DNA from: Heteronotia binoei
Taxonomy: Eukaryota
Assembly: GCF_032191835.1 (NCBI RefSeq)
Contig: NC_083237.1
Coordinates: forward strand, 10,478,001-10,542,000
Direction of reading: 5' to 3'
Length of the DNA stretch: 64,000 nucleotides
The notes under the pieces are model-generated. The model did not search any database, was not told where the DNA came from, and worked only from the letters and a program-made list of their open reading frames with translations. Position numbers and translations under genes: made by a program. Shown in pieces: positions 9,768-47,342 of the stretch. Position 1 is the stretch's first letter. The number at the start of each line of letters is the position of its first letter.

Positions 9768-10714
9768 CTTTTTTTCAAATAGGTTGATATGTAAAATTGA
9801 TCAAGACACTTATGGATAGGCATCAATTCAGATAGATGAAAGGAACAGAGTGAAGCATTGTTTTGCTGCCATGTGCACCCAAATTTCACGTGATCTGGGC
9901 AGCTACTCTCCCCATAGTACCAATTAATAATGTAAGGGCTATGGCCAGTTTTGAATGTGGTGGGAATAGCAGATCCGACTTTGAAAAAGCTGACTTGAAA
10001 TGGGATTCAACTACCTTCCCCCACAATCAGATGGCAACTGCTTTCAGTACTGATGAGTTGAGACCGGTTATATTTTATTAATCTCTTGCCTCTATGGGGG
10101 CTTTTGAAATCTCTAAACTGAAGAAAGGTGCTGCTATGCAAACACATTAAAGGATCATTGAAAGTTGAGAAAACCCCAGAAAACGCAGGATCTTGAAAAA
10201 ACACACACCTTAAGATGCAATTTTGCACATATTTACAGAGACAGAGCTGAAGCACTTCACACTTTCAGTATATTTCAATACGTGAAGGACTTGATTAATT
10301 GTTCTTTAAGAGATTTATACGCAGGGCTTTCTTTTTTGTAGCAAGAACTTCTTTACCTATTAGGACACACACTCCTGATGTAGCCAATCGTCCTGGAGCT
10401 TACAATAGTTTCTGTATTAGGAGCCCTGTAAGCTTTTGGAGGATTGACTATATCAGGGAGGTATGGCCTTATATGCAAATGAGTTCCTGCTACGAAAAAA
10501 GCCCTGCAATAAGCTTTTTGTACTGTCTGGTGTATAATACTGGTATGTTTTTACATAGGTAGAATATACATTATATATACAAACACAACATAAAAAGAAC
10601 AGAATAATGAAAAGTGTTTATTAGATATACATAATAAAAGTTTTTTGTTTCGATATTGCATTATTAGTAATTGTCATGGTGATATGCCTTTTTTTTTCTT
10701 CTTCGACTCTCCCC

Positions 10715-10842: not shown

Positions 10843-11336
10843 GAGTCTCAGAGCAGCTCACAATCTCCTTTACCTTCTTCCCCCACAACAGACACCCTAT
10901 GAGGTAGATGAAGATATTGGATTTATATCCTGCCCTCTACTCCGAAGAGTCTCAGAGCGGCTCACAATCTCCTTTCCCTTCCTCCCCCACAACAGACAAC
11001 CTGTGAGGTGGGTGGGGCTGGAGAGGGCTCTCACAGCAGCTGCCCTTTCAAGGACAACTTCTGCCAGGGCTATGGCTGACCCAAGGCCATGCTAGCAGGT
11101 GTAAGTGGAGGAGTGGGGAATCAAACCCGGTTCTCCCAGATAACAGTCTGCGCACTTAGCCACTACACCAAACTGGCTCCAAAGGTGTTTTGATTACTCG
11201 TTCTAGTTTCTGTATGAATGCTATTAAGAAATCTTTAATTTCAAAACAATTTTAAAAAAAACTAGTTGTAGGCATTTCCACATAGAAAAGCAATCCATGC
11301 TACTATCCTCATGTTCATAGGCAATGTTTATTCTGT

Positions 11337-11756
11337 AACTTTTTAATGAGGCTTGGAGATGGCATTTTACTTGGCATGGATATATTTTACCTTTGTTGAA
11401 GGCATTCCCATGAGATATGTTGCATTACTCACTGTACTTTTTTTTTTTTTAAAGAGAGGCTTGCATAAAAAAACTGAAATTAGAAAAAACAACCTTAACG
11501 TTAACTAAGTGGGGCGAACAGCTTCTTGAAGGAGAAATTTCTCATGAGGCCTTCAAACAAACTGGATGCTTAGCAGAGTAAAGGGATTAAGTGCCTCTGT
11601 TTCTACAAGTGCTTGGATTTATAAAAGGAAGATTCTATTTCTTTGTCCCTCTGTGCCAAGGATGTAGAATTATTTTTGTAACAATTACATCTAATTGAAT
11701 TGAATCAGTATCCGTTTTTTTTCCGCCAGGCATAGAGAAAACAGAGGAAGTGCAAG
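11337..11756 (+). promoter_or_regulatory. Candidate OR promoter/enhancer and first exon for the OR at 13846
   Basis: AACTTTTTAATGA 11337-11349; O/E-like TCCCATGAGA 11406-11415 and TCTCATGAGG 11540-11549; TATAAAAG 11620-11627; TAATTG near 11693; donor AAG|GTAAAG at 11757. Confidence 0.6.
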
Positions 11757-11827
11757 GTAAAGACTATCGTATTGTGTAAGGTTTAGTACATCCTACATAT
11801 AGGTAATTCTACCAAAAAAAGGGGGGG

Positions 11828-12025
11828 GTAAAGGTAGTCCCCTGTGCAAGCACCAGTCGTTTCTGACTCTGGGGTGACATTGCTTTCACAATGTTTTCAC
11901 GGCAGACTTTTTACGGGGTGGTTTGCCATTGCCTTCCCCAGTCATCTATGCTTTCCCCCCAGCAAGCAGGGGACTCATTTTACTGGCCTCAGAAGGATGG
12001 AAAGCTGAGTCAACCTGAATTCTAC
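11828..12025 (-). mobile_element. Sauria SINE 3' part (duplicate at 24020-24210)
   Basis: Reverse complement of the core and ACCTTT tail. Confidence 0.82.
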
Positions 12026-13595: not shown

Positions 13596-13845
13596 ATGTG
13601 ACTACCCACCTGAAAGCAATTTTGTTGCTAGCACAGTGGAATTTTAAAATTGATCGATAACGGAATCTTTCCTAAAGGATTTCCCCCCCTTTCTTGATCA
13701 CTGTTTATGTGACAATTTTATTACAGGATATGTGTCTGCCCTGGGTCACCCAATAAGTTTCAAGGACAAGACTGCATTTGCATCTAAATTTCCTGCCTCT
13801 CAGCCTTTTGAGAGGGTTAGTTGGTATTTTGCAGCCACCAAGGTG

Positions 13846-14808
13846 ATGATGAATTCATCAACCATAACTGAATTTATCCTAGTGGGGATTCCATTTCTCT
13901 ACGATCTACACAGGGTTTTCTTTTTCATAGGCTTATTTATGTACATTGTAGCCATCCTAGGGAATGGATTTATCCTTGTCATTGTGGCCATTGAGCCAAG
14001 ACTTCAGACACCCATGTACTTCTTCCTGAGCAACCTGGCTTTTTTGGAGATCTGCTACACCACGACCGTGGTACCCAAGCTGCTACAAACACTGATAGAA
14101 ACAAAGACCACAATTTGTTTCCATTGCTGCATGGCCCAGAACTTCTTCCACTTCACATTTGGAAGTACAGAGCTTTTAATCCTTACAGTGATGTCCTTCG
14201 ACCGTTATTTGGCCATATGCAAACCACTCCGATATCCAATGATCATGACCAAGAATGTTTGCATGCAGTTGTCCTTGACCACTTGGTACTTCTCATTCAT
14301 AGTCGTGTTTTTTCAATGTCTCCTTGTCTGGAAGATGTCTTTCTGTGCTTCCAACATTGTTGATCATTTCTTCTGTGATTTTGCACCCCTGTTCAGTCTA
14401 GCATGTAATGACACTCGCCTCAGTGAGCTTCTGGAATTGCTCAGCGCTGTCGTAATTGTTATTTTGACCTTGATCTTTACCATAGTCTCCTATATCTACA
14501 TCATCTCCACCATAATGCACATTCCTTCAGCTGTTGGGCGCAAGAAGGCTTTCTCCACCTGTACTTCTCACATGATTGTAGTGTCGATATTGTACGGAGC
14601 ACTGATAGTCATGTACGTGAAGCCCACTCTGCATTCCTCATCTCGCTTAACCAGGGTACTAGCGGTGCTGAACACTTCCCTCATTCCAATGTTGAACCCT
14701 TTCATTTACACAATAAGGAATGCAGAAGTGAAGGCTGCTGTCAGGGATGCGATCAATAAGAAGAGACAGTCGCTGAATGAAGAGTTTTTTAAGTGTAAAG
14801 GTCGGTAA
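13846..14808 (+). CDS. Olfactory receptor, family-6-like (subfamily B, copy 1), from MMNSS
   Basis: Full OR motif set (LQTPMYFFL, MSFDRYLAICKPLRY, KAFSTCTSH, PMLNPFIY); acceptor TTTTGCAG ends 13834. The ORF-track start at 13732 is a GTG. Confidence 0.95.
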   Translation: MMNSSTITEFILVGIPFLYDLHRVFFFIGLFMYIVAILGNGFILVIVAIEPRLQTPMYFFLSNLAFLEICYTTTVVPKLLQTLIETKTTICFHCCMAQNFFHFTFGSTELLILTVMSFDRYLAICKPLRYPMIMTKNVCMQLSLTTWYFSFIVVFFQCLLVWKMSFCASNIVDHFFCDFAPLFSLACNDTRLSELLELLSAVVIVILTLIFTIVSYIYIISTIMHIPSAVGRKKAFSTCTSHMIVVSILYGALIVMYVKPTLHSSSRLTRVLAVLNTSLIPMLNPFIYTIRNAEVKAAVRDAINKKRQSLNEEFFKCKGR

Positions 14809-17515: not shown

Positions 17516-20500
17516 GCAGATAGATAGATAGATAGATAATTTTATTTGTATCCCGCCCTCCCCGCCGAGGCAGGCTCAGGGCGGCTAACAACATCATACA
17601 AATTTCAATTATACAAAAAGCAAAAAACACAAAATTACATTTAAGCATTAAAATTCTGATTAGGTTTAAAATTAGTTAATTAAGTTAATAAAAGTGCTAA
17701 TACTGTTCTTTAGGATGGCGGTTATCATTAACAATTTCTTCCTTCGTCAGCGAAAGCTAGTCGGAAGAGGAAGGTCTTGCAGGCCCTGCGGAATTGTTCA
17801 AGGTCCCGCAGGGCCCGCATTTCCTCTGGAAGTTGGTTCCATAGGCTCGGGGCTACAGAGGAGAAGGCCCGGTTACGGGTACATTGCAGCTTCACCTCTC
17901 TCGGTCCGGGAGTAGTCAACAAGTTTTTTCCAGCTGACCTCAGTGCTCTCTGGGGTTCATATGGGGAGAGACGGTCCCTAAGGTAGACAGGTCCTCGACC
18001 ATATAGGGCTTTAAAGGTAATGACCAGCACTTTGTAACGAACCCGGTATGTAACTGGCAGCCAGTGCAGCTCGCGCAGTCCAGGCTGTATGTGCTCCCAT
18101 TTAGGAAGCCCCAGCAACAGCCTAGCCGCCGCATTCTGCACCAGCTGCAGCTTCCGGGTTCGGTACAGAGGCAGCCCCATGTAGAGGGCATTACAGTAAT
18201 CCAGTCTCGAGGTGACCGTTGCATGAAGTACCGTTGCCAGATCTTGGCGCTCTAGGAAGGGAGCCAACTGCCTTGCCCGCCTTAGATGGAAAAAGGCTGA
18301 CTTGGCGGTGGCTGCAATCTGGGCCTCCATTGATAATGAAGGCTCCAGTAAAACTCCCAGACTCCTAACCCGGTGCGCCGCTTTCAGCGGCACCCCGTCG
18401 AAGACCGGAAGAGGTATTTCCCCTTCCCGAGCGCCCCGACCCAGACAAAGGACTTCTGTCTTCGCTGGATTCAATTTCAGCCCGCTCCTCCTCAACCAAG
18501 TTGCCATATCCTGCAAGGCCCGGTCTAAATTCTCAGGGACGCAGTCAGGCCGGCCGTCCATCAGCAGATAGAGTTGGGTGTCATCTGCGTATTGATGGCA
18601 CCCAAGTCCGTATCCCCTGGCAATCTGGGCAAGAGGGCGCATGTAGATATTGAATAACATTGGTGAGAGAACTGCCCCCTGGGGCACTCCACAGTCCAGT
18701 GTGCGCCTCCGGGACCGCTCGCCCCCAATAGCCACCCTTTGTCCCCGATCCTCGAGGAAGGAGGAGAGCCACTGTAAGGCAGACCCCCTCACCCCTATGT
18801 CGGCGAGGCGGCAGGTCAGTAGCCGATGGTCGACCGTGTCGAACGCGGCCGACAGATCTAGCAGCATCAGCACCGCCACACCACCCCGATCCAGATGCCG
18901 TTGGAGATCATCTACCAGGGCGACCAGTACTGTCTCCGTCCCATAGCCCGGGCGAAAGCCGGACTGGCAAGGGTCTAGGATGGAAGCGTCATCCAGAAAG
19001 CTCTGCAACTGCAACGCCACTGCCCTCTCTATTATTTTACCTAAAAATGGTAAATTGGAGACCGGTCGGTAGTTTGCCAATTCGGCCGGGTCTGCTGTAC
19101 TTTTTTTCAAGAGGGGTCGGACCAAAGCCTCTTTCAGAGATGATGGAAAACGCCCCTCCAAGAGGGATCTATTTATGATGTCCCGTAGAGGACAATCTAG
19201 CTCCCTCAGGCAGGATTTAATTAGCCAGGAGGGGCATGGGTCCAGATCACAAGTTGTAGGGCGTGCAGAGGAGAGGATTCCGTCAACTTCCTCCAGGCTG
19301 AGCGGGTCGAAATGATCCAGAGTTAAATCAGAAGACAGGCGTGGGGCCTCGGGCTCATGTACTGTGTCTAAGGTGATGGGCAAGTCTTGGCGGAGTGACG
19401 TGATTTTGTCTGCAAAAAATCTCGCAAAAGCCTCACAGCCTATTTCTGATTCACTAGCGTTTGGTCTGCCCTGGGGCAGCGTAGTTAAATGTCCAATTAT
19501 TTTAAACAATTGCGCCGGGCGCGAGTTTGCAGACGCAATCTTGGCCGCGAAGTACTTCTTCTTCGCGGCCTTGACTGCCATCTCATACGACCTCATAAAC
19601 GTTCTGTAGGATGTTCTCGCCGCTTCGCCACGAGTGCGCCGCCACTGCCTCTCTAGTCGTCGGAGTCCTTGTTTCAACCGGCGTAGCTCCGAGGTATACC
19701 AGGGAGCCAGCCTTGAACGAGGGCGCAGAGGACGTCGGGGTGCGATCTCGTTGATTGCCCCAGATAGCCGGTCTTGCCAGGCATCAACCAGGGCATCAAG
19801 GGAATCGCAAGGGGGCCAAGGATCCCGAAGAGCCATTTGGAACCGTTCCGGGTCCATCAGGCTCCGCGGGCGAGCCAAAATAGGCTCTCCGCCCTTACAG
19901 GGTTGAGGTAGCGTCTCCATACGGGCCTTGAGGGCCAAGTGATCCGACCATGGTATCGCCTCCGTTGCGATTTCGTTCACTTTAATCCCGGCCGCAAAGA
20001 TCAGATCTAATGTGTGCCCAGCCTGGTGCGTGGGAGTCGTGACAAATTGGGAGAGTCCTAGTGTCGCCATGGAAGACACTAGGTCCATCGCCCGAATGGA
20101 AGCCGCGTCATCGGCATGGACATTGAAGTCGCCCAGGACTACGAGCCCCGGGTACTCCAACGCCCAGCCGGACACCGCCTCCATCAGGGATGGTAAGGCG
20201 CTGGCCGGTGCGTTAGGCGGATGGTACACCAGCCAGATCGCCAACCTCTCCCCGACTTCCCACGCAAGGCCGACACACTCAATACCGTCAATCTTTGGGG
20301 CCGGGAGGGCCCGGAAGGAGTAAGCCTCCCGTATGAAAATCGCCACCCCGCCACCCCGCCCGCTAATCCGCGACTGGTGGAAGACCGAGTAACCTGGGGG
20401 AGTCATCTGGGAGAGTGCCGTCGTCTCTCCCTCTTGAACCCAGGTCTCGGTCACGCAAGCCAGGTCAGCATCCTGCCGAAGCAGGAAGTCCCTGATGGTC

Positions 20501-20975
20501 TCGGTCTTATTATTTATAGACCTGGCGTTGCATAACACCAGTGTCGGACGCGGGCAATTTCTCTTGGTCCCTCTACTTGTCACCGTTGGGATGGGAAGTA
20601 GACTAGAAGGGGGCTGAGCACTGTTTTGTCTCTGTCTCCTTCTCTCGTATCTCTGTCCATTCCCACCGTCATATCTTCCCCTCCCCAGGAGCACTGGAAT
20701 CCCCTGACCGGACATCCCAAGCCTATTCTTTGGTGGTTGTATTAAAGTTCAACTGACTAACTTGAATACACAGCACAGACCCCCAGCCCACCCCTGTCCT
20801 CAGTTCCCAATTATCCAGTTCACCAATCTTTCCAAATTGATTAGTAAATAAATAAGTCTTACTTAGCACAATACTAAAATCTAATTCCTAAAATTTAAAG
20901 TGCTAACGTTAATAAATAATTGGTTAAATATGCTTAGTCCTGTCATAGCTTAGTCCTGTCATAGCAGTCATAGCT
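17516..20975 (-). mobile_element. Young L2 LINE; 3' end with (TATC)n tail near 17516, 5' boundary approximate
   Basis: 3' UTR ends GCCGCCCTGAGCC...GGGCGGGATACAAATAAAAT plus microsatellite; CpG-rich; no ORF1 seen. Confidence 0.8.
17728..20715 (-). CDS. L2-clade LINE ORF2: APE endonuclease plus reverse transcriptase, uninterrupted 995 aa
   Basis: EN motifs CNARSI, VTETW, GGGVA, LGDFN, SDH; RT motifs LDLSAAFDTVDH, GVPQG, YADD; L2-type C-terminus SRLDYCNAL, LQLVQNAAARLL, LHWLPV. Confidence 0.93.
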   Translation of the reverse strand: MSGQGIPVLLGRGRYDGGNGQRYERRRQRQNSAQPPSSLLPIPTVTSRGTKRNCPRPTLVLCNARSINNKTETIRDFLLRQDADLACVTETWVQEGETTALSQMTPPGYSVFHQSRISGRGGGVAIFIREAYSFRALPAPKIDGIECVGLAWEVGERLAIWLVYHPPNAPASALPSLMEAVSGWALEYPGLVVLGDFNVHADDAASIRAMDLVSSMATLGLSQFVTTPTHQAGHTLDLIFAAGIKVNEIATEAIPWSDHLALKARMETLPQPCKGGEPILARPRSLMDPERFQMALRDPWPPCDSLDALVDAWQDRLSGAINEIAPRRPLRPRSRLAPWYTSELRRLKQGLRRLERQWRRTRGEAARTSYRTFMRSYEMAVKAAKKKYFAAKIASANSRPAQLFKIIGHLTTLPQGRPNASESEIGCEAFARFFADKITSLRQDLPITLDTVHEPEAPRLSSDLTLDHFDPLSLEEVDGILSSARPTTCDLDPCPSWLIKSCLRELDCPLRDIINRSLLEGRFPSSLKEALVRPLLKKSTADPAELANYRPVSNLPFLGKIIERAVALQLQSFLDDASILDPCQSGFRPGYGTETVLVALVDDLQRHLDRGGVAVLMLLDLSAAFDTVDHRLLTCRLADIGVRGSALQWLSSFLEDRGQRVAIGGERSRRRTLDCGVPQGAVLSPMLFNIYMRPLAQIARGYGLGCHQYADDTQLYLLMDGRPDCVPENLDRALQDMATWLRRSGLKLNPAKTEVLCLGRGAREGEIPLPVFDGVPLKAAHRVRSLGVLLEPSLSMEAQIAATAKSAFFHLRRARQLAPFLERQDLATVLHATVTSRLDYCNALYMGLPLYRTRKLQLVQNAAARLLLGLPKWEHIQPGLRELHWLPVTYRVRYKVLVITFKALYGRGPVYLRDRLSPYEPQRALRSAGKNLLTTPGPREVKLQCTRNRAFSSVAPSLWNQLPEEMRALRDLEQFRRACKTFLFRLAFADEGRNC

Positions 20976-22404: not shown

Positions 22405-23526
22405 GTGGGGGGCTCACAACACCCAGCTGCTTTGTGTTTTTACCCTTTGGCCAAGGCTCATAGCATTAGCAGCAAGAGTAAGCTGAGGAAGGAGTTTGCC
22501 CCCCTCCAGGCAGTGCAGAAGTGCCTGCCCATCACTACACCACTGGCTCTATGGTCTGTCCATGTGGGTTTTCTTCTGCATCCCCCCAGCCCATGGAGCC
22601 CTGCTGTGAAGACACACCAACTTGGAGCTTACTAGCTGCAGTCCTTTATTAAGGTTTTATTTCCAGGACCCGCCATTAGGTTTTATGACACACATGGCCC
22701 AGCCTGACAAAGTCATATTTATGTCAGATCAAGCCCTCAAAACAAATGAGTTTGGCATCCCTGATAGACCATTCTCAATAAAGTAGAAACTGCTCTCTCT
22801 CACGCCCCCCCCCCCCGAACAATGACATGAGGCATCATGTTTATGAGTTAAACTCAGATTTATTTATAGATTTTATTTTAGAAGAAGAAGATGATGATTT
22901 TGGATTTATATCCTGCCCTCCACTCTGAAGGGTCTCAGAGCGACTCAAAATCTCCTTTACCTTCCTCCCCCACAACAGACACCCTGTGAGGTAGATGAAG
23001 ATATTGGGTTTATATCCCGACCTCCACTCCAAAGAGTCTCAGAGCGGCTCACAATTTCCTTTACTTTCCTCTCCCAAAACAGACACCCTTTGAGGTAGAT
23101 GAAGATATTGGATTTATATCCCGCCCTCCACTATGAAGAATCTCAGAGCTGCTCACAATCTCCTTTACCTTCCTCCCCCACAACAGACACCCTGTGAGGT
23201 GGGTGGGGCTGGAGAAGGCTCTCACAGCAGCTGCCCTTTCATGGACAACTTCTGCCAGGGCTATGGCTGACCCAAGGCCATGCTAGCAGGTGCAAGTGGA
23301 GGAGTGGGGAATCAAACCCGGTTCTCCCAGATAAGAATCCACACACTTAACCCCTACAGCAAACTGGCTCCAAAGGTGTTTTGATTACTCATTCTAGTTT
23401 CTGTATGAATGCTATTAAGAAATCTTTAATTTCAAAACAATTAAAAAAAAACTAGTTTTAGGCATTTCCACATAGAAAAGCAATCCATGCTACTATCCTC
23501 ATGTTCATAGGCAATGTTTATTCTGT

Positions 23527-23943
23527 AACTTTTTAATGAGGCTTGGAGATGGCATTTTACTTGGCATGGAAATATATTACCTTTGTTGAAGTCATTCCCA
23601 TGAGATACATTGCATTACTCACTGTACTTTTTTTTTTTAAAGAGAGGCTTGCATAAAAAACTGAAATTAGAAAAACAAACTTAACGTTAACTAAGTGGGG
23701 CGAACAGCTTCTTGAAGGACAAATTTCTCATGAGGCCTTCAAACAAACTGGATGCTTAGCAGAGTAAAGGGATTAAGTGCCTCTGTTTCTACAAATGCTT
23801 GGATTTATAAAAGGAAGATTCTATTTCCCTGTCCCTTTGCGCCAAGGATGTAGAATTATTTTTGTAACAATTACATCTAATTGAATTGAATCAGTATCTG
23901 GTTTTTTTTCCACCAGGCATAGAGAAAACAGAGGAAGTGCAAG
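23527..23943 (+). promoter_or_regulatory. Duplicate candidate OR promoter for the OR at 26063
   Basis: Same motifs conserved: HD 23527-23539, O/E-like 23596-23605 and 23726-23735, TATA 23806-23813, donor at 23944. Confidence 0.6.
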
Positions 23944-24552
23944 GTAAAGACTTATCATATTGTGTAAGGTTTAGTACATCCTACATAAAGGTAATTCTAC
24001 CAAATAAGGGGGGGGGGGGGTAAAGGTAGTCCCCTGTGCAAGCACCAGTCGTTTCCGACTCTGGGGTGACATTGCTTTCACGTTTTCACGGCAGACTTTT
24101 TACAGGGTGGTTTGCCATTGCCTTCCCCAGTCATCTACGCTTTCCCCCCAGCAAGCTGGGGACTCATTTTACCGACCTCAGAAGGATGGAAGGCTGAGTC
24201 AACCTGAATTCTACAAAATCTCAGTTTAACCCCCCCCCCCCCCCCGAAAAAAAACCCAGTCTTTTCTAACAATCCTTGTCAGTGAATCATTCCATAATTT
24301 TTTTTTTTCTATTTTTGGACCAAGTGAGTGACTAATTTTGTTTGAGACCACTGGCACCTTTAAGACCAACAAACTTTTATTCAAGGTATTGGCTTTTGCG
24401 TGCATGCACACTTCTTCAGATACAATGAAATGGAAATTGCCAGTTCAAATGCATAGGCAGAGGGATCCTTGTGGGCAGCAATGGTGGCCTGAAGCAGTAG
24501 AACAAAATAGGAGAACAGCAGCACCTTTAAGACCAGCAAGCTTTATTCAGAA

Positions 24553-25517: not shown

Positions 25518-26062
25518 ATTGATGGGCAGATGTGGATTGCCCATCCATCAGTTGTGGAATGCTGAGAGTAATCAAATGAGATCCTTCTGTTTGTTATTCT
25601 TGTTTGGCTCTAGAATCTGTGAAACACCTTCATTATGCTGCAAGCTAATTCACTAGTCACTCTCTACTTTATAAGTATGGACCGGTAATTTCCATTTAAT
25701 TGTGTCTTAGAAAAGAGTGTGCATACGAAAGCTTATATTTTGTATAACATTTTGTTGGTCTTAAAGGTGCCACTGGTCTCATTCTAGACTTCATTCTGCT
25801 GCTTCAGATTAAATGTGACTACCCACCTGAAAGTAATTTTGTTGATAGCACAAAGGAATTTTAAAGCTGATCGATAACAGAATCTTTCCTAAAGGATTTT
25901 TCCCCCTTCCTTGATCATTGTTTATGTGACAATTTTATTACAGGATATGTGTCTGCCCTGGGTCAGCAAACGAGTTTCAGGCACAAGACTGCATTTGCAT
26001 CTATATTTCCTGCCTTTCAGCCTTTTGAGAGGGTTAGTTGGTATTTTGCAGCCACCAAGGTG

Positions 26063-27031
26063 ATGATGAATTCATCAACCATAACTGAATTTATCCTAGT
26101 GGGGATTCCATTTCTCTACGATCTACACAGGGTTTTCTTTTTCATAGGCTTATTTATGTACATTGTAGCCATCCTAGGGAATGGATTTATCCTTGTCATT
26201 GTGGCCATTGAGCCAAGACTTCAGACACCCATGTACTTCTTCCTGAGCAACCTGGCTTTTTTGGAGATCTGCTACACCACGACCGTAGTACCCAAGCTGC
26301 TACAAACACTGATAGAAACACGGACCACGATTTGTTTCCATTGCTGCATGGCCCAGAACTTCTTCCACTTCACATTTGGAGGTACAGAGCTTTTAATCCT
26401 TACAGTGATGTCCTTCGACCGTTATTTGGCTATATGCAAACCACTCCAATATCCAATGATCATGACCAAGAATGTTTGCATGCAGTTGTCCTTGGCCACT
26501 TGGTACTCCTCATTCATAGCCATGTTTTTTCAGTGTTTCCTTGTCTGGAGGATGTCTTTCTGTGCTTCCAACATTGTTGATCATTTCTTCTGTGATGCTG
26601 CACCCCTGTTCAGTCTAGCATGTAACGACACTCGCCTCAGTGAGCTTCTGGGATTGCTCAGTGCTGTTGTAATGGTTATTTTGACCTTGATCTTTACCAT
26701 AGTCTCCTATATCTACATCATCTCCACCATAATGCGCATTCCTTCAGCTGTTGGGCGCAAGAAGGCTTTCTCCACCTGTACTTCTCACATGATTGTAGTG
26801 TCTATATTGTATGGAGCACTGATGGTCATGTACGTGAGGCCCACTCTGCATTCCTCATCTCGCTTAACCAGGGTACTAGCGGTGCTGAACACTTCCCTCA
26901 TTCCAATGTTGAACCCTTTCATTTACACAATAAGGAATGCAGAAGTGAAGATTGCTGTCAGGGGTGCAATCAATAAGAAGAGACAGTTGCTGAATGAAGA
27001 GTTTTTTAAGTGTATCCAAAAAGGTCGGTAA
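26063..27031 (+). CDS. Olfactory receptor, family-6-like (subfamily B, copy 2)
   Basis: Near-identical paralog of 13846-14808 with the full motif set; acceptor ends 26051. Confidence 0.95.
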   Translation: MMNSSTITEFILVGIPFLYDLHRVFFFIGLFMYIVAILGNGFILVIVAIEPRLQTPMYFFLSNLAFLEICYTTTVVPKLLQTLIETRTTICFHCCMAQNFFHFTFGGTELLILTVMSFDRYLAICKPLQYPMIMTKNVCMQLSLATWYSSFIAMFFQCFLVWRMSFCASNIVDHFFCDAAPLFSLACNDTRLSELLGLLSAVVMVILTLIFTIVSYIYIISTIMRIPSAVGRKKAFSTCTSHMIVVSILYGALMVMYVRPTLHSSSRLTRVLAVLNTSLIPMLNPFIYTIRNAEVKIAVRGAINKKRQLLNEEFFKCIQKGR

Positions 27032-30000: not shown

Positions 30001-33000
30001 GTGAGGTAGATGAAGATATTGGATTTATATCCCGCCCTCCACTCCGAAGAGTCTCAGAGCGGCTCACAATCTCCTTTACCTTCCTCCCCCACAACAGACA
30101 CCCTATGAGGTGGGTGGGTCTGAGAGGGCTCTCACAGCAGCTGCCCTTTCAAGGACAACCTCTGCCAGAGCTATGGCTGACCCAAAGGCCATTCCAGCAG
30201 CTGCCAGTGGAGGAGTTGGGAATCAAACCCGGTTCTCCCAGATAAGAGTCCGCATAGTTCACCACTACACCAAACTGGCTTTTTACAAGAAATTACAGAT
30301 TCTCGTGTAAAGAATCAAAAAAGCTGACAGGGAGAATGTCGATTGATTTGAAATGCAGTGTTGGAGGAGTGTTGGCACATGCTGTAGACTGCCAAAGAGA
30401 CAAATTAAACTGATTCCAGTTCAAGTTAAGCCTGAACTCTCCCTAGAAGCTAAAATGACTATTTTTAAAAATTTTATTTTATCAGATTTATATCTCTCCC
30501 TCCCCTAATGGGCTCAGGGTGGCCCACAACAGTTAAAAACAAAGATAAATTTTTAAAACAAGATATACGTTATCGGATGGCATTGGGAGAAAGAACAATA
30601 ATGCTTGGAAAAGTTGAAGGTTGCAGGAAAAAAAGAAGTTCCAGGAGAGGGACGGTGGCTCATTGGTAGAGCATCTGCTTGGTAAGCAGAAGGTCCCAGG
30701 TTCAATCCCTGGCATCTCCAACTAAAAAGGGTCCAGGCAAGTATGGGTGAAAAACCTCAACTTGAGACACTGGAGAGCCACTGTCAGTCAGGTGAGGGAC
30801 GGTGGCTCAGTGGAAGAGCATCTGCTTGGTAAGCAGAAGATCCCAGGTTCAGTCTCTGGCATCTCCAACTAAAAGGGTCCAGGCAAGTAGGGGTGGAAAA
30901 CCTCAGCTTGAGACCCTGGAGAGCCCTTGCCAGTCTGAGTAGACAAGACTTTCTACAGATGAAAGATGCCACCAAAAGGACATTGTTTTATCCTATGGCT
31001 TTAGGTATCCCAGTCCTCTGCTGGGGTGAGGTTTCCCCTGATATCAGTGGCTCCATCTGCTACTGGCCAGCTGGCTGGTCAGGAAGCCCTACCCCCAAAT
31101 GTCCTCCTCCCATCTTGACATCATCATGCCAGGCACATCATGTGCGGATACTGTAGCACATTGGCCGACACTCTATGGTTACCATAGAGTTTTTGGGCAA
31201 AATGCTAGCACATCCAAGAGTGACATGCCTGGCATGATGATGTCACTTCTTGGTGACATCATTGCACCGCACACACAAAGCACACACATACCGAGAGGAA
31301 CATCCCAGAATAGGTCTGGGAGCCCCCTGCTGAAAGTCAGGTAAGATCTGGCGATCCGATACGGCTTTCAAGTTTTAGCTTTGAAGCATGCTTAGTGGTT
31401 TTGTGATTGTTCAGCTTTTTGTTGATCTCTAGGATGAAAAGTTTAAAATACATTAGGCAGACCTTTTGAAACAAAATGATCCTCCCTACTACAACTAATC
31501 TCAGGTGTGCTTGATATATCAGGCTCATAGGTTCATCATCAATCTGAATTAGCATGGGAGAAATTGACTTTTGGGAAGAAATTCCCATGAGAAACTGCTA
31601 GCAAGTGAAGAGACTGGAGACTTACTGAGTCAAACCTACTTTTAATAGCTTTGGTAATGTTAAAAGCTTTCACAGAGCAACTGAATGCTCAGCTGACATG
31701 ATCCACTCAAATGACTTCAGTTCTAAAAAAGGACTTTGCTTTCTTCTCCGTTTGGTATACAAACAACAGACAGGGACAAATGAAGGCTTTTCTTAGCATT
31801 CAGTATAGATAGTCTCTATCCAATGCTTCTTCAGATTGTGCTGAAAACAAGATGATGAGCACAGCGTCATGCAAAAATCTGTGCAATCCCAACATTGTGG
31901 TGGAATTAATTCAGCATAGTCTCATTGTGGAGATTTCTATCCATAGTGACATAGCAAAGACTGCTTTTTAAAGTATCCCCACCAGCACCTTTTCCTAACC
32001 CACTCTTCAGAATCATAGAGGATATTTTTCTGCTATTGGAATGAATAGGTAATTATTTTCCTTTGATGATTGAAATATAATGATGAATTAAGCATGTGGG
32101 AGGGGAAAGCTATGCATTCCTTTTCTGCATCATCTACACCGAATTTTCTTTGTTATTGGTTTATTTGTCTACATGGTAACCATTTATAGGTAGTCAAGCT
32201 CTTTCATTCCAAATGGAGTATTTGCTAATCTTTTCATCTTGGTGGTAGTTGAAAGTGCCATCAAGTAACAGCTAAGTTAGAAATACTCCTAATAGGGTTT
32301 TCAAGGTTCAGTCCCTGGCACCTCTAGTTAAAAAGGTGATGTGATAGACCTCCATTTGAGACTCTGGAGCTACATGGACAGTCTGAATAGGCAATACTGA
32401 CCTCAATGGACCAAGGGTCTGCTCTGGTGTAAGGCACCTTCATATACATGTGTATTCATATATGTCCTTTGGCACTGAAATGGTATTGTATCTGCATGTA
32501 TTTGTGAAAATCTATGAATGTGAGCAAGGTAAACTCTGTAAATGGCCATTGGTTGAGCTAAAAAAACCCAGACCTTTGAAGATAAGTGATAAGATAAGAT
32601 TTTGGATTTATATCCTGCCCTATACTCTGAATCTCAGAGCGGTCACAATGTCCTCTACCTCCCCCACCACCACAACAAACACCCTGTGAGTTAGGTGGGG
32701 CTGAGAGTGCATTTTACAGCAGCTGCACTTTCAAGGATAGCTTCTATGAAAGCTATGGCTGACCCAAGGCCATCTCAGCAGGTGCAAGTGGAGGAGTGGG
32801 AAATCAAACCTGGTTCTCCCAGATAAGAGTCCGTGCACTTAACCACTACACCAAACTGGCTCTCAAGATAAAGATCAAAGTTTTTATATGTTTTTATATC
32901 CAGTCTTCAGTCTATTTGGCTAGCAGGAGACCAGTTAATGTGTTGGTGTGATATATTTGAGAGAATGGGTAAATGATAAAAGATTTTGTGCTCTTCACCT

Positions 33001-36430: not shown

Positions 36431-39339
36431 TAAACTGACTTGTCTGGACCAACTATTGTTAGGTATAGTAGAGTCTAGTATGTCATTGTCATTGTATATT
36501 TTGCTTTAAAAATAAAAGAAAGAAATCTAGTCAGTTTTAAAGGTGCTACTGGACTCAAATCTTACTCTTCCATGGTGGACCAACATTGTGATATACCTGA
36601 AACTATCTCTATTGCTGTATTAAGTGAGCCAGAGCAAACAGCAGACTATCTTGCATCAATTCACATAAAGCATATATCCACATAAAGTGTCACTACATGA
36701 GAATACAGTGAAACTTTTCATATTTCAGCACCGGTATTTCGTATGTGAGGGAGAAAAATGACAGGTACGAGGAAAATTATCCCCAAGGAAAGGAATCTCT
36801 AGATCAATTCAATCACCATCATTTTCGGTGAACATAAGAACTGTTCTCTTGATCTTCTGCTCTTTGAGAGATGGAAGAATAAAGTCTCATTCACTGGAAT
36901 ACACTCTCTGATCTTCTAGTCTTTGGATATTAATGCATAATTTTTGTTACGAATAAACAAAGAAACATGGTTCTGATCCAAACTACACAGAGTTAAGGCA
37001 CTTGGAGAACTGAACTTTTTTAAAAAAATCTTTTCAAGTCTTAATCTTCAACATGTCTACGAGAGCTTTTCTCAAGAGACATTCCTCAGGGAAATAATGG
37101 CAGATGCTTGGGTGTACCATCAAAAAGGGAGGCATAATAGCTCCTCTTCATCAGCAATGCCTTCAAAACAATACGCCAAGTATATAGAAAAGCAAGAAGG
37201 TTGGTGCCTACCATAATTGCCCTTATCTATTGGCCTATTGCTTTGATGTAGATGGCCCAGGCTAGACTGGTCTCATCAGATCTTGGGAGCTAAGCAGGTT
37301 TGTCTCTGATTGATACTTGGATGGGGAGCCACCAAGGAGTATCAGGGTAGCTATGCCAAGAAAAGCAATGGCAAACCACTTGTTTGTGTCTGCCTTAAAA
37401 ACCCTCCCTTGGTCTATCTCAGGTAGGTGAGATGAAAGTACAGATTTTTTTTTTAAAATGATGTGTCTATGTATAACATCATAAGTGCAACGTAAGAGGA
37501 CAATGAACTAATTCACTTCTTTTTTGGACAATGAACTAATTTGCATAGGATTTTGTAAGATGCTATGCATCCTCATCAAATGCTTGCCCCCCGGTATGGT
37601 TGCTTGGCAGACATTCTTTTTTATTCTAAAAATATTCCGGAGACTTACTGCACTTAACAGAAACGGTATTCGAGTAACTGAACTTACGAACAAGAGAGAA
37701 AAGGATGACAACTTCTTTTCGTTGCAGCAATAGATGTCCATTGTAAGATAGTGTCTCATTGCGTACCATTTATAATACGTTCCATCAACAAGAAAATCTC
37801 CTGTTATTTCACTGCATCCCTCTATATTCTTTTGAAAGATGAGGAACTTCTAGCTAACTTGATATCTATTTTGCATTTATGGATATTGGTTAGAATAAGT
37901 AATTTGTGAGTATGAAATTAATTACTACAGTCCATTGAAACAGGGTTTTCAGAAAGCTGCAAAAAAAAAAAAAAAAAGCTGAGTTCAGCTGTTTCGGGCT
38001 TTCTTGTGCAGTCTCCTTAAAATTTATTTTATTTTGTTTAGAGAAACTATATGCTAACTCTGCATCTTAAGGCAATTTACAATATNNNNNNNNNNNNNNN
38101 NNNNNNNNNNNNNNNNNNNNNNNNNNNNNNNNNNNNNNNNNNNNNNNNNNNNNNNNNNNNNNNNNNNNNNNNNNNNNNNNNNNNNNNNNNNNNNNNNNNN
38201 NNNNNNNNNNNNNNNNNNNNNNNNNNNNNNNNNNNNNNNNNNNNCATGTCCACTATACAAACTGAAACTTCTGCCAAAAATATAAATGAAGTTGAATAGA
38301 ATAGAGAGCATTTGCTGATTCTTAGTCAAATATTGCCCAACCTAGATGGCCCAAATGAGTCTGATTTTGTCAAGACTTTGGAAGCCAAGCAAGGTCAGTC
38401 CTGGTTAGTACTTATGAGACACCACTAAGGAAGTCCACAGCCACCATACAGGGGCTGGAAATGGTAAAGCGCCTCAGTTTCTCTTTTGACTTGAAAATCC
38501 TATGGGTGAGCATGAATTAATTGCAGTTTGATGGCACCTTCCACCACTAGTCTTAGTGTATGTATTAGTGTATGTAGATTCAGAAACAAGTGTGTGATGG
38601 GCCCAAAATCATCCAGCAAGCTTCCATGGCAGAGTGGGAATATTAAACCTGAGTCTCCCAGATCCTAATCTGACACTATAATCTGTGTACCACACTAGTT
38701 GTCAATATTTCTAGATTAATTATAGTTTTTTTGTCACTGAATCTAACTTTCATTAGTCTGTTTGGGTATTTATTAATTTTTTAATGTTCTGAAGTATTAA
38801 AAAAATCTACCCTGCCTTTTTCCTTATCTGTCCAGGATACCACAAGGAGGACTCAAGAAATCTCCCCCCCCCATCTCCTTCTTTCTCCCTTGCCCTCTTA
38901 AACTATTAATCACAGCTAAATTGTTTCAAAAAAATTCCACTTGGTTTACATGATTTGTTGAATTAATGTTTGAAATAACCCATCCTTATTCCATTTTTAA
39001 ACTGTATTTTCTATGTCATATAATGATTTACTCTTTCCATGTTCTAGGTTTTTTCCCATTAAACATTATCAATTGATGATGATGATTATACAATTACTTT
39101 GTATATTATCATATGCAACAAGTGATTTCATCCCCCCCACTTGCAGATTAAAGACTGGTGAAAATTACATGGAAGAACTTTTTTTTTTAAAGGGTTCCTG
39201 TATTGAAGGAAAAAAAAATCCTGAAATCCCCTATGGAAATCCCACCCACTATTTGACTGAAAAACTTTTTGGATGACGGTTCGCTTGGAAGTTGTCCCAC
39301 ACACTCTGATAGCTGAGGTGGCCTCGTATATTTATAGAC

Positions 39340-44710: not shown

Positions 44711-47342
44711 TCAATTCCTTCCTAATAATTTCCAGCATGGCTTGGTGAGGGGGGGGTCATGATTTCTTATTCCTGGGTAGGTCATCATGGTTTTGGATTC
44801 AAATCTGCAAGATTTAGGGGATTGTGGAATTTGGAGAAATATATACAAGGGTCTTGGTCAGCTTCTTATGAAGACAATGGTACCAAATTTGCACAGAACA
44901 CAATTTTTCCTGTTATCTAAAGACCCCTTTCAATTTAAGCTGATTGAACAAAGAAATATATTTTTACAGAACCACCAAAATAGGTGACTTTCTGTATAGC
45001 CATATCTTTTTTGAATCCCATAATGGGGAGCCAAATGTTAGCCTAGCATGGGAGCTCTGGCAGATAAAAACAATCTGCATTCATTTTTGTTTCCTATTCT
45101 TACAGTGACTAACAATGAAAAAAAAAACACATTAAGTGAAAATAATGTATTTTCCATCCTTCCTTGTCTTAGCCTCTCTGTTTTTTTTTCACCAAATAAA
45201 AGTGGCTTCCTTTCAGAACTGTCTCCATCCCTTCCTGTCATTCTGCAATTACTCCCTCCGGGGGAAAAATTCCTGCAGTGTGGGTGTCGTCTGTCCACTG
45301 AAGAACCCCAAGTAAACTGAACCATGGTGTTAAATTTTACCACACTCTGGACATATTGCCTTTAACTCACTATTTTCCCAGCTACAGTATCTGCAAAATA
45401 AACAACAAACTAATTAAAAGGGCCCTACAGTATCTGCAAAATAAACAACAAACTAATTAAAAGGAGAGCAGGAGTTCTCTGCACCTTGTCCCAAAAGTGA
45501 TTGGCTGGAAACACTGTGTGCTCCGCCTATCAAGGATCTCATTGGAAGGGAGAAATGCCATTGCCAAGGAAGTCAGTGGAATCAACAAAAAACAAGCTTT
45601 CATGCTGCATGATTGGCAAGTATACAAAAAAAAATTTCCCCCAGAGAGGCTTCTTTTTTGTTATACCAACAAGCCTAGATTTGTATTACTGTACTGAAAA
45701 ATCACTGTACAAACCCACACTAGCTACTTTCATGTATACCTTCAGCTCAGCAATTTCATTATGCACACCTCTACCAGACATCAGCAACTGACCAACCTTC
45801 TTGCTGGGCTCTGTTGGTTGATCACAATAACCTGTTGTCAAGGTTGTTCATATCTTTCATTCCCATTCTACTCAGTTTTCTGTTGCTAAAGGAACCCACA
45901 CTGACATGAAAGAAAGAGATGATGTTACAGTTAAACATAGAAATTTTTAAAATAAACTTTATGTTAACTTACATTGGAGTCTTGCCTCTTTATTTGCAGG
46001 GTAAGGGGTTGCAAATAAATTGTTTGTTAACTTCATGTGTTTTGGTGTCTTTTAGAAGAAAGATGATTGAGCACTGTTACTGATATCTTTTAAGTGATTG
46101 ACAGGAAATTCCTTTCCAGATATCTACAGTATAATCCTTTAAAAAAAAATTCAGAAGGAAGTTCTATTGAACTCACTGGGGCTTATTCCCTACTGAATGC
46201 ATCTAGGATTTAATACTGAGTCTACCAGGAGCAAAGGATGTTTTGTTTGTTTCTTTGTGTCGAGGCCTTCCTATCTTCATGAAAAGTGTTGTAGCTCATT
46301 GAGAAGTTGGCCCTAGTCAGAAGATACTTTGTCCACTTGATATGACCTGATAGCCTCTCTGCTATATCATAATGTGGTCAATTTTTTTTTGAAGATCAAA
46401 CTATACTCTTTCTCAATGAGTTTTCCACGGGGAGGTGCTGTGGCTCAATGGCAGAGCATCTGTTTGGCTTTCAGAGAATCCCAGGTTCAGTTACTGGAAT
46501 CTCCACTTAAAAGGAGATGGCAGGAAGTGAGGTAGCAGGTGATGAAAAAGACCTATGCCCAGGACCCTGAACTACTGCTGTCAGTCTGAGAAGACAAAGA
46601 TCTGATTCATTATAAGGCACTTTCTGAGACTTTCTTGAGACTTGCCACCATATTGCAGTGGCAGGTTCCCGTGGCAAGTTGTGTGTAAAAGGTACAGATG
46701 AGGTCCATTATGATCAAGACATCAATGTGGGGGGAAGGGGTCTTGACTCTCCCTTATTCCATTTTCAGCAGCGAAAGTAACTCAAGGGGCTCTAGGGATA
46801 GGTGTTATCTGCACTGTAGAAAGCAGCTACTGCATTTTTTGCAGTTTGAGTGCATGATGAAAACAATGCCTGTTGCCATAACCCATGGTTCATTTTGACT
46901 GCCAAAAGTGGTGTAGATGGTGCGTCATTGTTTATGGCCCAACAAGGCATCCTAAATCCATGTAAAAGATGGTCTGAGAGAATACGGCAGATATCCCAGT
47001 GTGTTCTGACAGAAGAATTTCTTTAGAGACAATATTTTAGAATGTTTCTTTGTTTGCTCAGAAAGAAATTAAAATATCACACTGATGACTGCATGTATAC
47101 TTCAATAATATAGACCAAGGTGTTCAACAGAGGGTTCAAGCACTTGGAGGAATTAACTACATTTTTTTTTTCTTGAGGCTTAATTAATGTTCTGAATAAG
47201 TCTAGGAGAACTTTTCTCAAGAGACATTCCTCTGGGAAATGATGGCAGATACTAGGATGTGCCATCAAAAAGAAAGACATAATTGCTCCACTTTATCAAA
47301 AGTGGCTTCAAAACAATATGTCAAGTACACAGGAAAGCAATA

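What the first reader, a model, noticed from the sequence alone, without database searches (positions are those of the whole stretch)
11337..11756. Mammalian H/P-element OR-choice core motif in a reptile OR cluster, with O/E sites, TATA and a splice donor
Seen: TAACTTTTTAATGAG at 11336-11350, repeated identically at 23526-23540, in non-repeat DNA about 2.5 kb upstream of each subfamily B OR. It is followed by TCCCATGAGA, TCTCATGAGG, TATAAAAG and a strong donor. Established: the 13-mer AACTTTTTAATGA is the homeodomain (Lhx2) site shared by the mouse H enhancer, P element and P3 promoter; OR promoters and enhancers pair such sites with O/E (Ebf) sites. My rough chance estimate at 60% AT is about 0.01 exact 13-mer hits per 64 kb on both strands, counting the two copies as one event. 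Inference: this is a reptilian promoter or cluster enhancer using the same gene-choice code, implying the code is amniote-ancestral and that it was duplicated along with the gene.
Basis: partly seen in the sequence, partly recalled or inferred. Interest (0 to 1): 0.82.

Follow-up and report, generated by a model that had tools for sequence, protein, structure and literature searches.

The report
Lizard odorant-receptor upstream module with Lhx2-type site
A short DNA word that helps mouse smell neurons choose one odorant receptor gene also sits in a duplicated, promoter-like stretch upstream of reptile odorant receptor genes and is several-fold enriched in this genome's receptor clusters, but no expression or binding data could be obtained.

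Summary
The 15-mer TAACTTTTTAATGAG is at 11336-11350 and 23526-23540, followed in both copies by TCCCATGAGA, TCTCATGAGG, TATAAAAG and CAAG|GTAAAG.

The two copies are one event. They lie in a ~600-bp non-repeat module with seven copies, all in this OR cluster and each upstream of an OR on the same strand. Two more copies just outside the window keep the exact 13-mer. Three older copies have AACTTCTTAATTA.

Papers confirm the 13-mer as the extended homeodomain site of mouse H, P, P3 and the x21 enhancer.

Genome-wide the word is not over-represented (281 hits, reversed control 287). It is enriched in OR clusters: 6 independent events against 1 among 637 listed hits of two composition-matched controls (p about 0.004; 0.011 without the discovery event).

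Evidence for selective constraint is equivocal. The O/E-like sites are weak. No RNA evidence could be obtained, so the promoter and first exon remain inferred.

Best reading (about 0.5): an OR promoter-proximal module carrying an Lhx2-type site and duplicated with its gene. "Amniote-ancestral" is not shown by one genome. That the trans-acting factors are conserved was already implied by mouse enhancers working in zebrafish. Verdict: new member of a known kind, moderate interest.

The parts
11185..11800 (+). Upstream module, copy B1: a non-repeat island between two SINEs, 2.0-2.6 kb upstream of the B1 OR ATG
   Evidence: Only 7 genome matches, all local. 96% identical to 23376-23987. Homologous over about 490 bp, at about 62% identity, to the 'proximal' modules of the neighbouring ORs.
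11269..11296 (+). Most conserved block of the module family (TAGGCATTTCyAyATAGAAAAGCAATC). No known motif assigned.
   Evidence: Nearly invariant in all copies aligned.
11336..11350 (+). Extended homeodomain (Lhx2-type) site TAACTTTTTAATGAG. It contains the H/P/P3 13-mer and equals the 15-base core of the mouse x21 enhancer.
   Evidence: for the sequence. for the literature.
11406..11415 (+). O/E-like site TCCCATGAGA: one mismatch to TCCCNNGGGA, and it does not fit YYYCARRRR
   Evidence: The half-site ATTCCCAT is conserved in every full module, but the proximal copies have a 2-bp insertion.
11540..11549 (+). Weak O/E-like palindrome TCTCATGAGG (three mismatches to TCCCNNGGGA)
   Evidence: The proximal copies read TCTCATCTGG.
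11620..11627 (+). TATA box TATAAAAG
   Evidence: Degenerate (TTTCTAAAGG) in the proximal paralogues.
11650..11756 (+). Putative untranslated first exon (inferred only), ending at the donor CAAG|GTAAAG
   Evidence: Sequence only. It contains the conserved blocks CTGTGCyAAGrATGTAGA and TAACAATTACAT. There is no RNA support.
13823..13851 (+). Candidate splice acceptor (tattttgcag|CC) and start codon of the B1 OR (ATG at 13846)
   Evidence: Identical in B2 at 26040-26068.
13846..14808 (+). B1 odorant receptor coding exon.
   Evidence: Other ORs of the window are 7tm_4 by Pfam.
23376..23987 (+). Upstream module, copy B2. 15-mer 23526-23540; O/E-like 23596-23605 and 23726-23735; TATA 23806-23813; donor 23940-23949.
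26063..27031 (+). B2 odorant receptor coding exon
10843..11184 (+). SINE copy abutting the 5' end of the module (multi-copy family in the window)
11827..12016 (+). SINE copy just 3' of the putative donor, inside the putative intron

Best explanation
The stretch 11185-11800, and its duplicate 23376-23987, is most likely a gene-proximal regulatory module of an odorant receptor subfamily. The most probable form is a promoter plus a short untranslated first exon, spliced over a SINE-filled intron of about 2 kb to the single coding exon.

The module carries an extended LIM-homeodomain (Lhx2-type) site identical to the mouse H/P/P3 13-mer and to the x21 core. It also carries one O/E-like site, a TATA box and a donor. 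It was copied with its gene during tandem duplication.

**Shown:** the motifs and their coordinates; the module's paralogy and its fixed upstream, same-strand position; that it is not a dispersed repeat; and enrichment of the 13-mer in OR clusters of this genome.

**Inferred:** that Lhx2 (with or without Ebf) binds it; that transcription starts about 30 bp after the TATA; that the donor is used; and that the site raises the chance that the gene is chosen.

The letter-for-letter identity with the mouse word is better read as the same preferred extended Lhx2 site arising or persisting in a lineage-specific module. It is not orthologous conservation of an element.
For: 1. **A gene-linked module.** Seven paralogous copies exist, all in one cluster and each upstream of an OR on the same strand. 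B-type copies are 2.5 kb from the ATG and proximal copies 1.27 kb. It is not a genome-wide repeat.
2. **Surviving homology.** Between the B-type units and the 79%-class units, where the coding sequences are 85.7% identical, very little non-repeat upstream DNA still aligns. What aligns is the module, a 105-bp piece just before the coding exon, and one palindromic element. The 200-bp 5' part holding the 13-mer is an isolated island at 83% identity, while the DNA immediately 5' of it is unalignable.
3. **Lower divergence in one pair.** The B1 and B2 modules diverge half as much as their flanks: 2.35% against 4.81% at non-CpG sites, p=0.004.
4. **Enrichment in OR clusters.** 10 of 281 hits (6 independent events) lie in OR clusters. 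The reversed word gives 0 of 287. The dinucleotide-matched rotation gives 1 of 350 listed hits. Fisher p=0.0038, or 0.011 without the discovery event.
5. **O/E-like neighbours.** All 6 independent OR-cluster hits have an O/E-like site within 150 bp, against 4 of 9 non-OR hits.
6. **Rare architecture.** The ordered series of O/E-like site, TATA and donor follows only 0.3% of window positions, which is essentially just these two copies.
7. **Fits mammalian OR promoters.** Published features are 5' UTR introns, AT-rich repeat-poor DNA, O/E and homeodomain sites, and TATA boxes in a subset (PMC3247239).
8. **Function of the word in mouse.** It is documented for the 13-mer and the 21-mer (PMC7804114, PMC5638857, bioRxiv 10.1101/2021.09.28.462154).
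Against:
- **No significant motif conservation.** Between the B-type and distal copies, P is about 0.24 for a given 13-mer and 0.30 for the longest perfect run.
- **Constraint signal does not replicate.** In one proximal pair the module is more diverged than its flanks (2.08% against 0.59%). In another it equals the intron. This points to mosaic gene conversion.
- **Variant sites in older copies.** Older paralogues carry AACTTCTTAATTA, and one possible distant relative has no TAAT at all.
- **Weak O/E-like sites.** Their spacing is broken in the proximal copies.
- **TATA and donor are not conserved in position** in the proximal copies.
- **Chance abundance.** Genome-wide, the word is as frequent as its control.
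- **Mixed arrangements elsewhere.** Only L015/L016 and L022 lie upstream of an OR on the same strand. L014, L017 and L021 lie 3' of ORs, two of them antisense. L016 shows no comparable promoter anatomy.
- **Limits of the enrichment test.** It rests on 6 events and two control words. The OR map is incomplete (138 of at least 945 candidates scored). 41 hits of the second control were never listed.
Confidence: 0.5

Rival explanations
1. This is neutral intergenic DNA that was copied passively with the genes. The 13-mer is a chance AT-rich word that happens to equal a famous mouse motif, and the TATA and donor are also chance matches.
For: - The genome-wide count equals the reversed control.
- With at least 945 ORs, about 0.15-0.3 chance hits are expected within 3 kb upstream of some OR. 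That is my own arithmetic.
- The four local copies are one event.
- Motif conservation is not significant.
- The module is not consistently less diverged than its flanks.
- The O/E-like sites are weak.
Against: - There are six independent OR-cluster events, against at most 1 in 637 control hits.
- O/E-like neighbours occur at 6 of 6 OR-cluster events.
- The module is among the very few upstream stretches still alignable between old paralogous units.
- The ordered architecture is unique to these two copies in the window.
Confidence: 0.27
2. The module is an enhancer of the Greek Island type and not a promoter. It would recruit Lhx2 and Ebf and act at a distance on several ORs of the cluster.
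For: - The 13-mer is best known from the H and P enhancers and from the x21 enhancer.
- The truncated 'distal' copies keep only the 200-bp 5' part with the 13-mer, lack the TATA and exon, and sit 1.1 kb upstream of a second full module.
- Several OR-cluster hits elsewhere are not in promoter positions.
- One of them, L022, has the 13-mer two bases from TCCCTTGAGA, resembling the mouse Sfaktiria composite.
Against: - At the finding itself the nearest O/E-like site is 56 bp away, so there is no composite motif with stereotyped spacing.
- The element is repeated once per gene at a fixed distance, unlike single intergenic islands.
- It is followed by a TATA box and a donor.
- At L022 the spacing differs by one base from the published composite probe.
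Confidence: 0.15
3. The stretch is part of an unrecognised transposable element or other dispersed repeat that carries the 13-mer.
For: It is flanked on both sides by SINE copies, and the cluster is rich in SINE and LINE insertions.
Against: - The 616-bp query finds only 7 matches in 2.63 Gb, all within 55 kb.
- The contexts of the other 13-mer hits share no similarity with it.
- The word is no more frequent than its control.
Confidence: 0.03

Closest known systems
Extended homeodomain site of the mouse H and P elements and P3 promoter, and the 21-bp 'x21' gene-choice enhancer ACATAACTTTTTAATGAGTCT
   Same: The 13-mer is identical, and 15 contiguous bases are identical to the x21 core. It lies in an OR cluster, upstream of an OR and on the same strand.
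   Different: The surrounding DNA shows no homology to H, P or P3. There is one copy per module, not a multimer. No functional or binding data exist. Older paralogues of the same module carry AACTTCTTAATTA.
Mammalian OR promoters: AT-rich, repeat-poor, with O/E and homeodomain sites near the TSS, a TATA box in a subset, and a 5' UTR intron before an intronless coding exon (PMC3247239)
   Same: It is a repeat-free island between SINEs. It has a homeodomain site, an O/E-like site and a TATA box, then a donor about 130 bp further on and an acceptor just before the ATG. It lies 2-2.6 kb upstream on the coding strand.
   Different: The TSS and splicing are unverified. The homeodomain site would lie about 310 bp from the predicted TSS, further than the -200..0 window analysed in mouse. 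The O/E sites are weak, and none is an exact TCCCNNGGGA.
Greek Island composite Lhx2/Ebf motif, for example the Sfaktiria EMSA probe AAACTTTTTAATTGA-TCTCCAAGGA (PMC5608512, supplementary file 7)
   Same: It has the same AACTTTTTAAT extension 5' of the homeodomain core. Elsewhere in this genome (C15:17955216, locus L022) the 13-mer is followed after two bases by TCCCTTGAGA, inside an OR cluster.
   Different: [quoted passage not shown] At L022, TAAT and the O/E site are separated by 4 bases, against 3 in the probe. The paper reports that a 2-bp insertion already impairs binding of the fusion protein.
J element HD1 (AAACTTTTAATGA), the class I OR enhancer (PMC7804114)
   Same: It is a related extended homeodomain word in an OR regulatory element.
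   Different: It is a different word (T4 not T5, with an extra A). J is a single long-range mammalian element conserved from platypus to human and not found in frog or zebrafish.

Membership tests
Extended homeodomain (Lhx2-type) site of OR enhancers and promoters (H/P/P3/x21) | Exact sequence AACTTTTTAATGA, containing a TAATKR homeodomain core | tested here: met
   Exact at 11337-11349 and 23527-23539, plus two more copies at C15:10459166 and C15:10470499. The definition is from PMC5638857 and PMC7804114.
Extended homeodomain (Lhx2-type) site of OR enhancers and promoters (H/P/P3/x21) | Preferential location in OR clusters compared with the rest of the genome | tested here: met
   6 of 276 independent events against 1 of 637 listed control hits, p=0.0038, or 0.011 without the discovery event. 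Caveats: small counts, an incomplete OR map, and two control words only.
Extended homeodomain (Lhx2-type) site of OR enhancers and promoters (H/P/P3/x21) | Evolutionary constraint on the site | tested here: inconclusive
   The site is perfectly kept between copies that are 83% identical, but that is expected by chance (P about 0.24). It changes to AACTTCTTAATTA in the copies at about 62% identity. No orthologous genomes were available.
Extended homeodomain (Lhx2-type) site of OR enhancers and promoters (H/P/P3/x21) | Binds Lhx2 and raises the probability of OR choice | not testable with these tools
   Needs EMSA, ChIP, or a reporter or transgene test.
OR promoter with an untranslated 5' exon | Upstream of an OR coding exon, on the same strand, within a few kb | tested here: met
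   2509 and 2536 bp upstream of the ATGs. All seven module copies are upstream of an OR on the same strand.
OR promoter with an untranslated 5' exon | A transcription start, and splicing from the upstream exon to the coding exon | not testable with these tools
   No listed RNA run holds the locus. Only consensus-level donor and acceptor sequences were seen.
OR promoter with an untranslated 5' exon | An O/E (Ebf) site near the homeodomain site and the TSS | tested here: inconclusive
   TCCCATGAGA has one mismatch to TCCCNNGGGA and fails YYYCARRRR. TCTCATGAGG has three mismatches. Both carry a 2-bp insertion in the proximal paralogues. One-mismatch sites occur about once per 3.4 kb in the window.
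Greek Island (intergenic OR enhancer) | A composite Lhx2/Ebf motif with stereotyped close spacing | tested here: not met
   [quoted passage not shown] The published probe has 3 bases between TAAT and the O/E site.
Greek Island (intergenic OR enhancer) | A solitary intergenic element serving a cluster, co-bound by Lhx2 and Ebf and accessible within heterochromatin | tested here: inconclusive
   The element is repeated once per gene at a fixed distance, which argues against a solitary element. Binding and accessibility cannot be tested here.

The most novel reading that the evidence does not exclude
The extended homeodomain word AACTTTTTAATGA is a genuine OR-choice cis-element shared by reptiles and mammals. 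It would be used both in gene-proximal modules, as here, and in intergenic composite sites such as C15:17955216, where it directly precedes an O/E-like site. That would mean the Lhx2-based cis grammar of OR choice, including its 5' T-rich extension, predates the split between the mammalian and reptilian lineages.
Probability: 0.27. Interest if true: 0.65.

Novelty: new member of a known kind. Interest (0 to 1): 0.42.

Why it matters
How one odorant receptor gene is chosen per neuron has been worked out almost entirely in mouse. The only hint of deep conservation found in the papers read is that some mouse enhancers drive expression in zebrafish olfactory neurons (PMC5638857). That result speaks to the trans-acting factors, not to the native cis-elements of other vertebrates.

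A reptile OR module carrying the exact mouse gene-choice core, together with a several-fold excess of that word in the reptile's OR clusters, gives concrete candidate elements for experiments. These are the B-type module and the composite-like site at C15:17955216. They could be tested by reporter assay, Lhx2 binding and chromatin accessibility.

If confirmed, the cis grammar of OR choice would extend beyond mammals. If refuted, this becomes a cautionary case of an AT-rich word matching a well-known motif by chance.

Tried and rejected
- **RNA support.** Two searches for sequencing runs gave only four metatranscriptome runs holding 5-8% of the words, probably the SINE parts, and none for the putative exon. 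About 0.3 were expected, so this is uninformative.\n- **Relaxed 13-mer scan of the 124-kb cluster, up to 2 mismatches.** 25 hits against 10 for the control, but confounded by paralogy. Not used.\n- **Constraint from duplicate pairs.** Positive for B1 against B2, but reversed or null in the proximal pairs. Judged equivocal.\n- **Longest-run test around the motif.** Not significant.\n- **Homology of the TCCCATGAGA context at 31583 to the module.** It belongs to a separate four-copy element and is not supported by BLAST. Dropped.\n- **Promoter anatomy at the independent upstream hit L016.** None found. A dispersed repeat follows the motif.\n- **Transposable-element origin of the module.** Rejected.\n- **Earlier notes of the scan.** Nothing for this place or these words.

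Full report
**1. What is in the sequence.**
The window is G000:C15:10478001-10542000 of a 2.63-Gb genome. It holds a tandem array of odorant receptor genes, all on the + strand, with SINE and LINE insertions between them. Pfam gives 7tm_4 for the ORs tested and RVT_1 for 17728-20715(-) and 53670-54824.

| Feature | Copy 1 | Copy 2 |
|---|---|---|
| 15-mer TAACTTTTTAATGAG | 11336-11350 | 23526-23540 |
| TCCCATGAGA | 11406-11415 | 23596-23605 |
| TCTCATGAGG | 11540-11549 | 23726-23735 |
| TATAAAAG | 11620-11627 | 23806-23813 |
| CAAG|GTAAAG | 11753-11762 | 23940-23949 |

The 13-mers lie 2509 and 2536 bp upstream of the ATGs of the two B-type ORs. A candidate acceptor, tattttgcag|CC, sits 13 bp before each ATG.

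**2. The two copies are one event inside a gene-linked module.**
The stretch 11185-11800 is 96% identical to 23376-23987, within a 3-kb duplicated block that is 93.5% identical. Against the whole genome the 616-bp stretch finds only seven matches, all within 55 kb on C15. It is therefore not a dispersed repeat.

I fetched 60 kb upstream of the window and mapped the ORs. Every copy lies upstream of an OR on the same strand. There are three kinds of copy:
- **B-type.** Two full modules, 2.5 kb from the ATG.
- **Proximal.** Three full modules at window coordinates -30671, -17815 and -6561. Each is 1.27 kb from the ATG of an OR whose protein is 79% identical to B. They are about 62-69% identical to the B module over about 490 bp.
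- **Distal.** Two truncated copies at -18994 and -7665, 83% identical to the first 200 bp of the B module and then cut off by a SINE insertion.

The distal copies keep the exact 13-mer inside a perfect 35-bp block. The proximal copies read AACTTCTTAATTA at that position. That is still a TAATKR homeodomain core, and a second site (GCTAATTAGC) follows it.

**3. The literature claim is correct.**
[quoted passage not shown] They note that tandem repeats of it markedly raise transgene expression.

The multimerised "x21" gene-choice enhancer is ACATAACTTTTTAATGAGTCT. The lizard copies share its 15-base core.

The composite-motif EMSA probe from the mouse Greek Island Sfaktiria reads AAACTTTTTAATTGA followed directly by TCTCCAAGGA (PMC5608512, supplementary file 7). 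The AACTTTTTAAT extension therefore recurs in mouse OR enhancers.

**4. Is it more than chance?**
In the window, yes.

Genome-wide, the word is not over-represented: 281 hits against 287 for the reversed word.

With at least 945 OR candidates in the genome, I estimate 0.15-0.3 chance hits within 3 kb upstream of some OR. One such event alone is therefore not compelling.

- **Hit lists.** I listed all 281 positions and all 287 positions of the reversed control.
- **Fetching.** I applied one rule to both words: every hit on the OR-rich contig C15, plus hits within 3 Mb of a listed OR elsewhere. For each such hit not already in hand I fetched a 10-kb stretch; the four copies in this cluster were already covered by the window and the 60 kb fetched upstream. 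I searched all of them with OR proteins from this window.
- **Real word.** 10 hits, making 6 independent events, have an OR in the stretch.
- **Reversed control.** None of its hits does.
- **Second control.** This is the rotation AATGAACTTTTTA, with identical dinucleotides and no TAAT. It has 391 hits, of which 350 were listed. One falls in OR territory by coordinates.

Fisher's test gives 6/276 against 1/637, p=0.0038. Without the discovery event it gives 5/275, p=0.011.

The other events are:

| Place | Locus | Arrangement |
|---|---|---|
| C15:41871248 and C15:41599985 | L016, L015 | Paralogues of each other, one event. 2.1 kb upstream of an intact OR and about 3.2 kb upstream of an OR fragment, same strand. 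|
| C15:17955216 | L022 | 4.3 kb upstream of an OR, same strand |
| C15:39528965 | L014 | In an OR cluster, 3' of the OR |
| C21:171369083 | L017 | In an OR cluster, 3' of the OR, antisense |
| C13:18224394 | L021 | In an OR cluster, 3' of the OR, antisense |

Apart from the paralogous pair L015/L016, their contexts share no similarity with one another or with the B module. All six independent events have an O/E-like site within 150 bp, against 4 of 9 non-OR hits.

L022 is notable. Its sequence AACTTTTTAATGAGG is followed immediately by TCCCTTGAGA. This juxtaposition resembles the Sfaktiria composite, but with 4 bases instead of 3 between TAAT and the O/E site.

The test has limits:
- The counts are small.
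- Only two control words were used.
- The OR map is incomplete.
- 41 hits of the second control were never listed; they belong to a repeat-derived sub-class.

**5. Is the module under constraint?**
The answer is equivocal.
- **B1 against B2.** The module is half as diverged as its flanks: 2.35% against 4.81% at non-CpG sites, p=0.004.
- **Proximal pairs.** In the pair -16.5k against -5.2k the module is more diverged than its flanks (2.08% against 0.59%). In -16.5k against -29.3k it equals the intron. That pattern looks like mosaic gene conversion, not uniform selection.
- **Motif conservation.** Perfect retention of the 13-mer between the B-type and distal copies is expected by chance (P about 0.24; longest run P=0.30).
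- **A softer footprint.** Between the B-type and 79%-class units, whose coding sequences are 85.7% identical, little non-repeat upstream DNA still aligns. What aligns is the module, 105 bp before the coding exon, and a palindromic element. The 200-bp island with the 13-mer is 83% identical, while the DNA immediately 5' of it is unalignable.

**6. Promoter anatomy.**
The ordered series of an O/E-like site within 100 bp, a TATA box 150-400 bp further on, and a donor 60-200 bp after the TATA follows only 0.3% of window positions. That is essentially these two copies. The definition is post hoc, however.

The arrangement fits published mammalian OR promoters. Those have 5' UTR introns, AT-rich repeat-poor DNA, O/E and homeodomain sites, and TATA boxes in a subset (PMC3247239).

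Several points weigh against it:
- The O/E-like sites are weak (one mismatch and three).
- Both carry a CT insertion in the proximal copies, which breaks the Ebf half-site spacing.
- The TATA box is degenerate in the proximal copies.
- The donors are not at homologous positions.

No RNA evidence could be obtained.

**7. Verdict.**

The motif sits in a real, gene-linked upstream module that duplicated with its OR. The 13-mer is enriched in this genome's OR clusters. The module looks like an OR promoter with a first untranslated exon.

The following are not shown:
- Transcription from the module.
- Binding of Lhx2 or Ebf.
- Constraint on the motif.
- Ancestry of the element.

The variant in older paralogues shows that the exact word is a state of one sub-lineage. 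The identity with mouse is best read as the same preferred extended Lhx2 site, not an orthologous element.

That the trans-acting factors are conserved across vertebrates is already implied by the H and Lipsi enhancers working in zebrafish neurons (PMC5638857). I therefore rate this a new member of a known kind, of moderate interest.

Later protein and Pfam queries used other ORs of the window. My alignments of the B1 upstream region stopped at 13845.

Noticed in passing
window 37038-37100, 47179-47245, 54982-55048: The C-type ORs (ATGs at 39340, 50514 and 57621) have their own conserved upstream module, 2.3-3.3 kb from the ATG. It carries CTTAATTAATG (homeodomain), TTCTCAAGAGA (O/E-like), and a near-perfect O/E palindrome ATTCCTCTGGGAAAT directly followed by TAATGG (TGATGG in one copy). 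This is a clearer homeodomain plus O/E cluster than the one in the finding, and it is followed by a SINE that looks derived from 5S rRNA.
   Followed up: partly
G000:C15:17955216 (locus L022, minus strand): The 13-mer is followed after two bases by TCCCTTGAGA. The site is in an OR cluster, 4.3 kb upstream of one OR and 2.4 kb downstream of another. This composite-like juxtaposition resembles the mouse Sfaktiria probe, but the spacing differs by one base. It is a candidate reptilian Greek-Island-like site.
   Followed up: partly
window 11269-11296 and 23459-23486, and all other module copies: The block TAGGCATTTCyAyATAGAAAAGCAATC is the best conserved piece of the module across all seven copies, better conserved than the homeodomain site. 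I could assign no known motif to it.
   Followed up: no
window 11406-11415 and 11540-11549, compared with the proximal copies (ext -17655, -17540): Both O/E-like sites differ in the same way between module types. B-type copies have CATGAG and proximal copies have CATCTG, which is an E-box created by a 2-bp CT insertion at both sites. This could be concerted change or coincidence.
   Followed up: no
G000 small contigs C351, C271, C245, C289, C355, C297: The best 7tm_4 matches in the genome (about 350-413 bits) all lie on small unplaced contigs, while chromosomal ORs score about 185-213 bits. This could be a distinct OR class much closer to the Pfam seed sequences, or foreign or misassigned DNA.
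   Followed up: no
window 17728-20715 (-): An open 995-aa LINE ORF with endonuclease and reverse transcriptase domains lies between the B1 and B2 units. It accounts for part of their 12.2-kb spacing.
   Followed up: partly
window 10323-10505, also ext -19573..-19403 and -8235..-8074: A palindromic element of about 170 bp matches itself on both strands. It is found only upstream of the B1 and 79%-class units, at 82% identity, with unalignable DNA between it and the module.
   Followed up: no
window 31380-32000, also ext -24284, -11498, -282: A four-copy element of about 620 bp (85-86% identical) lies about 4 kb downstream of the 79%-class and B2 ORs. At 31583 it contains the same ATTCCCATGAGA as the B module. 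Homology to the module is not supported.
   Followed up: partly
G000:C1:266618760 and 266640252 (L019, L020): Two 13-mer hits 21.5 kb apart sit in 98.8%-identical, GC-rich (53%) duplicated DNA with no OR nearby. This looks like a segmental duplication unrelated to olfaction.
   Followed up: partly
genome-wide: The control word extended to AATGAACTTTTTATTR occurs 141 times, against 44 for its reversed form. It therefore belongs to some dispersed repeat family of this genome.
   Followed up: no
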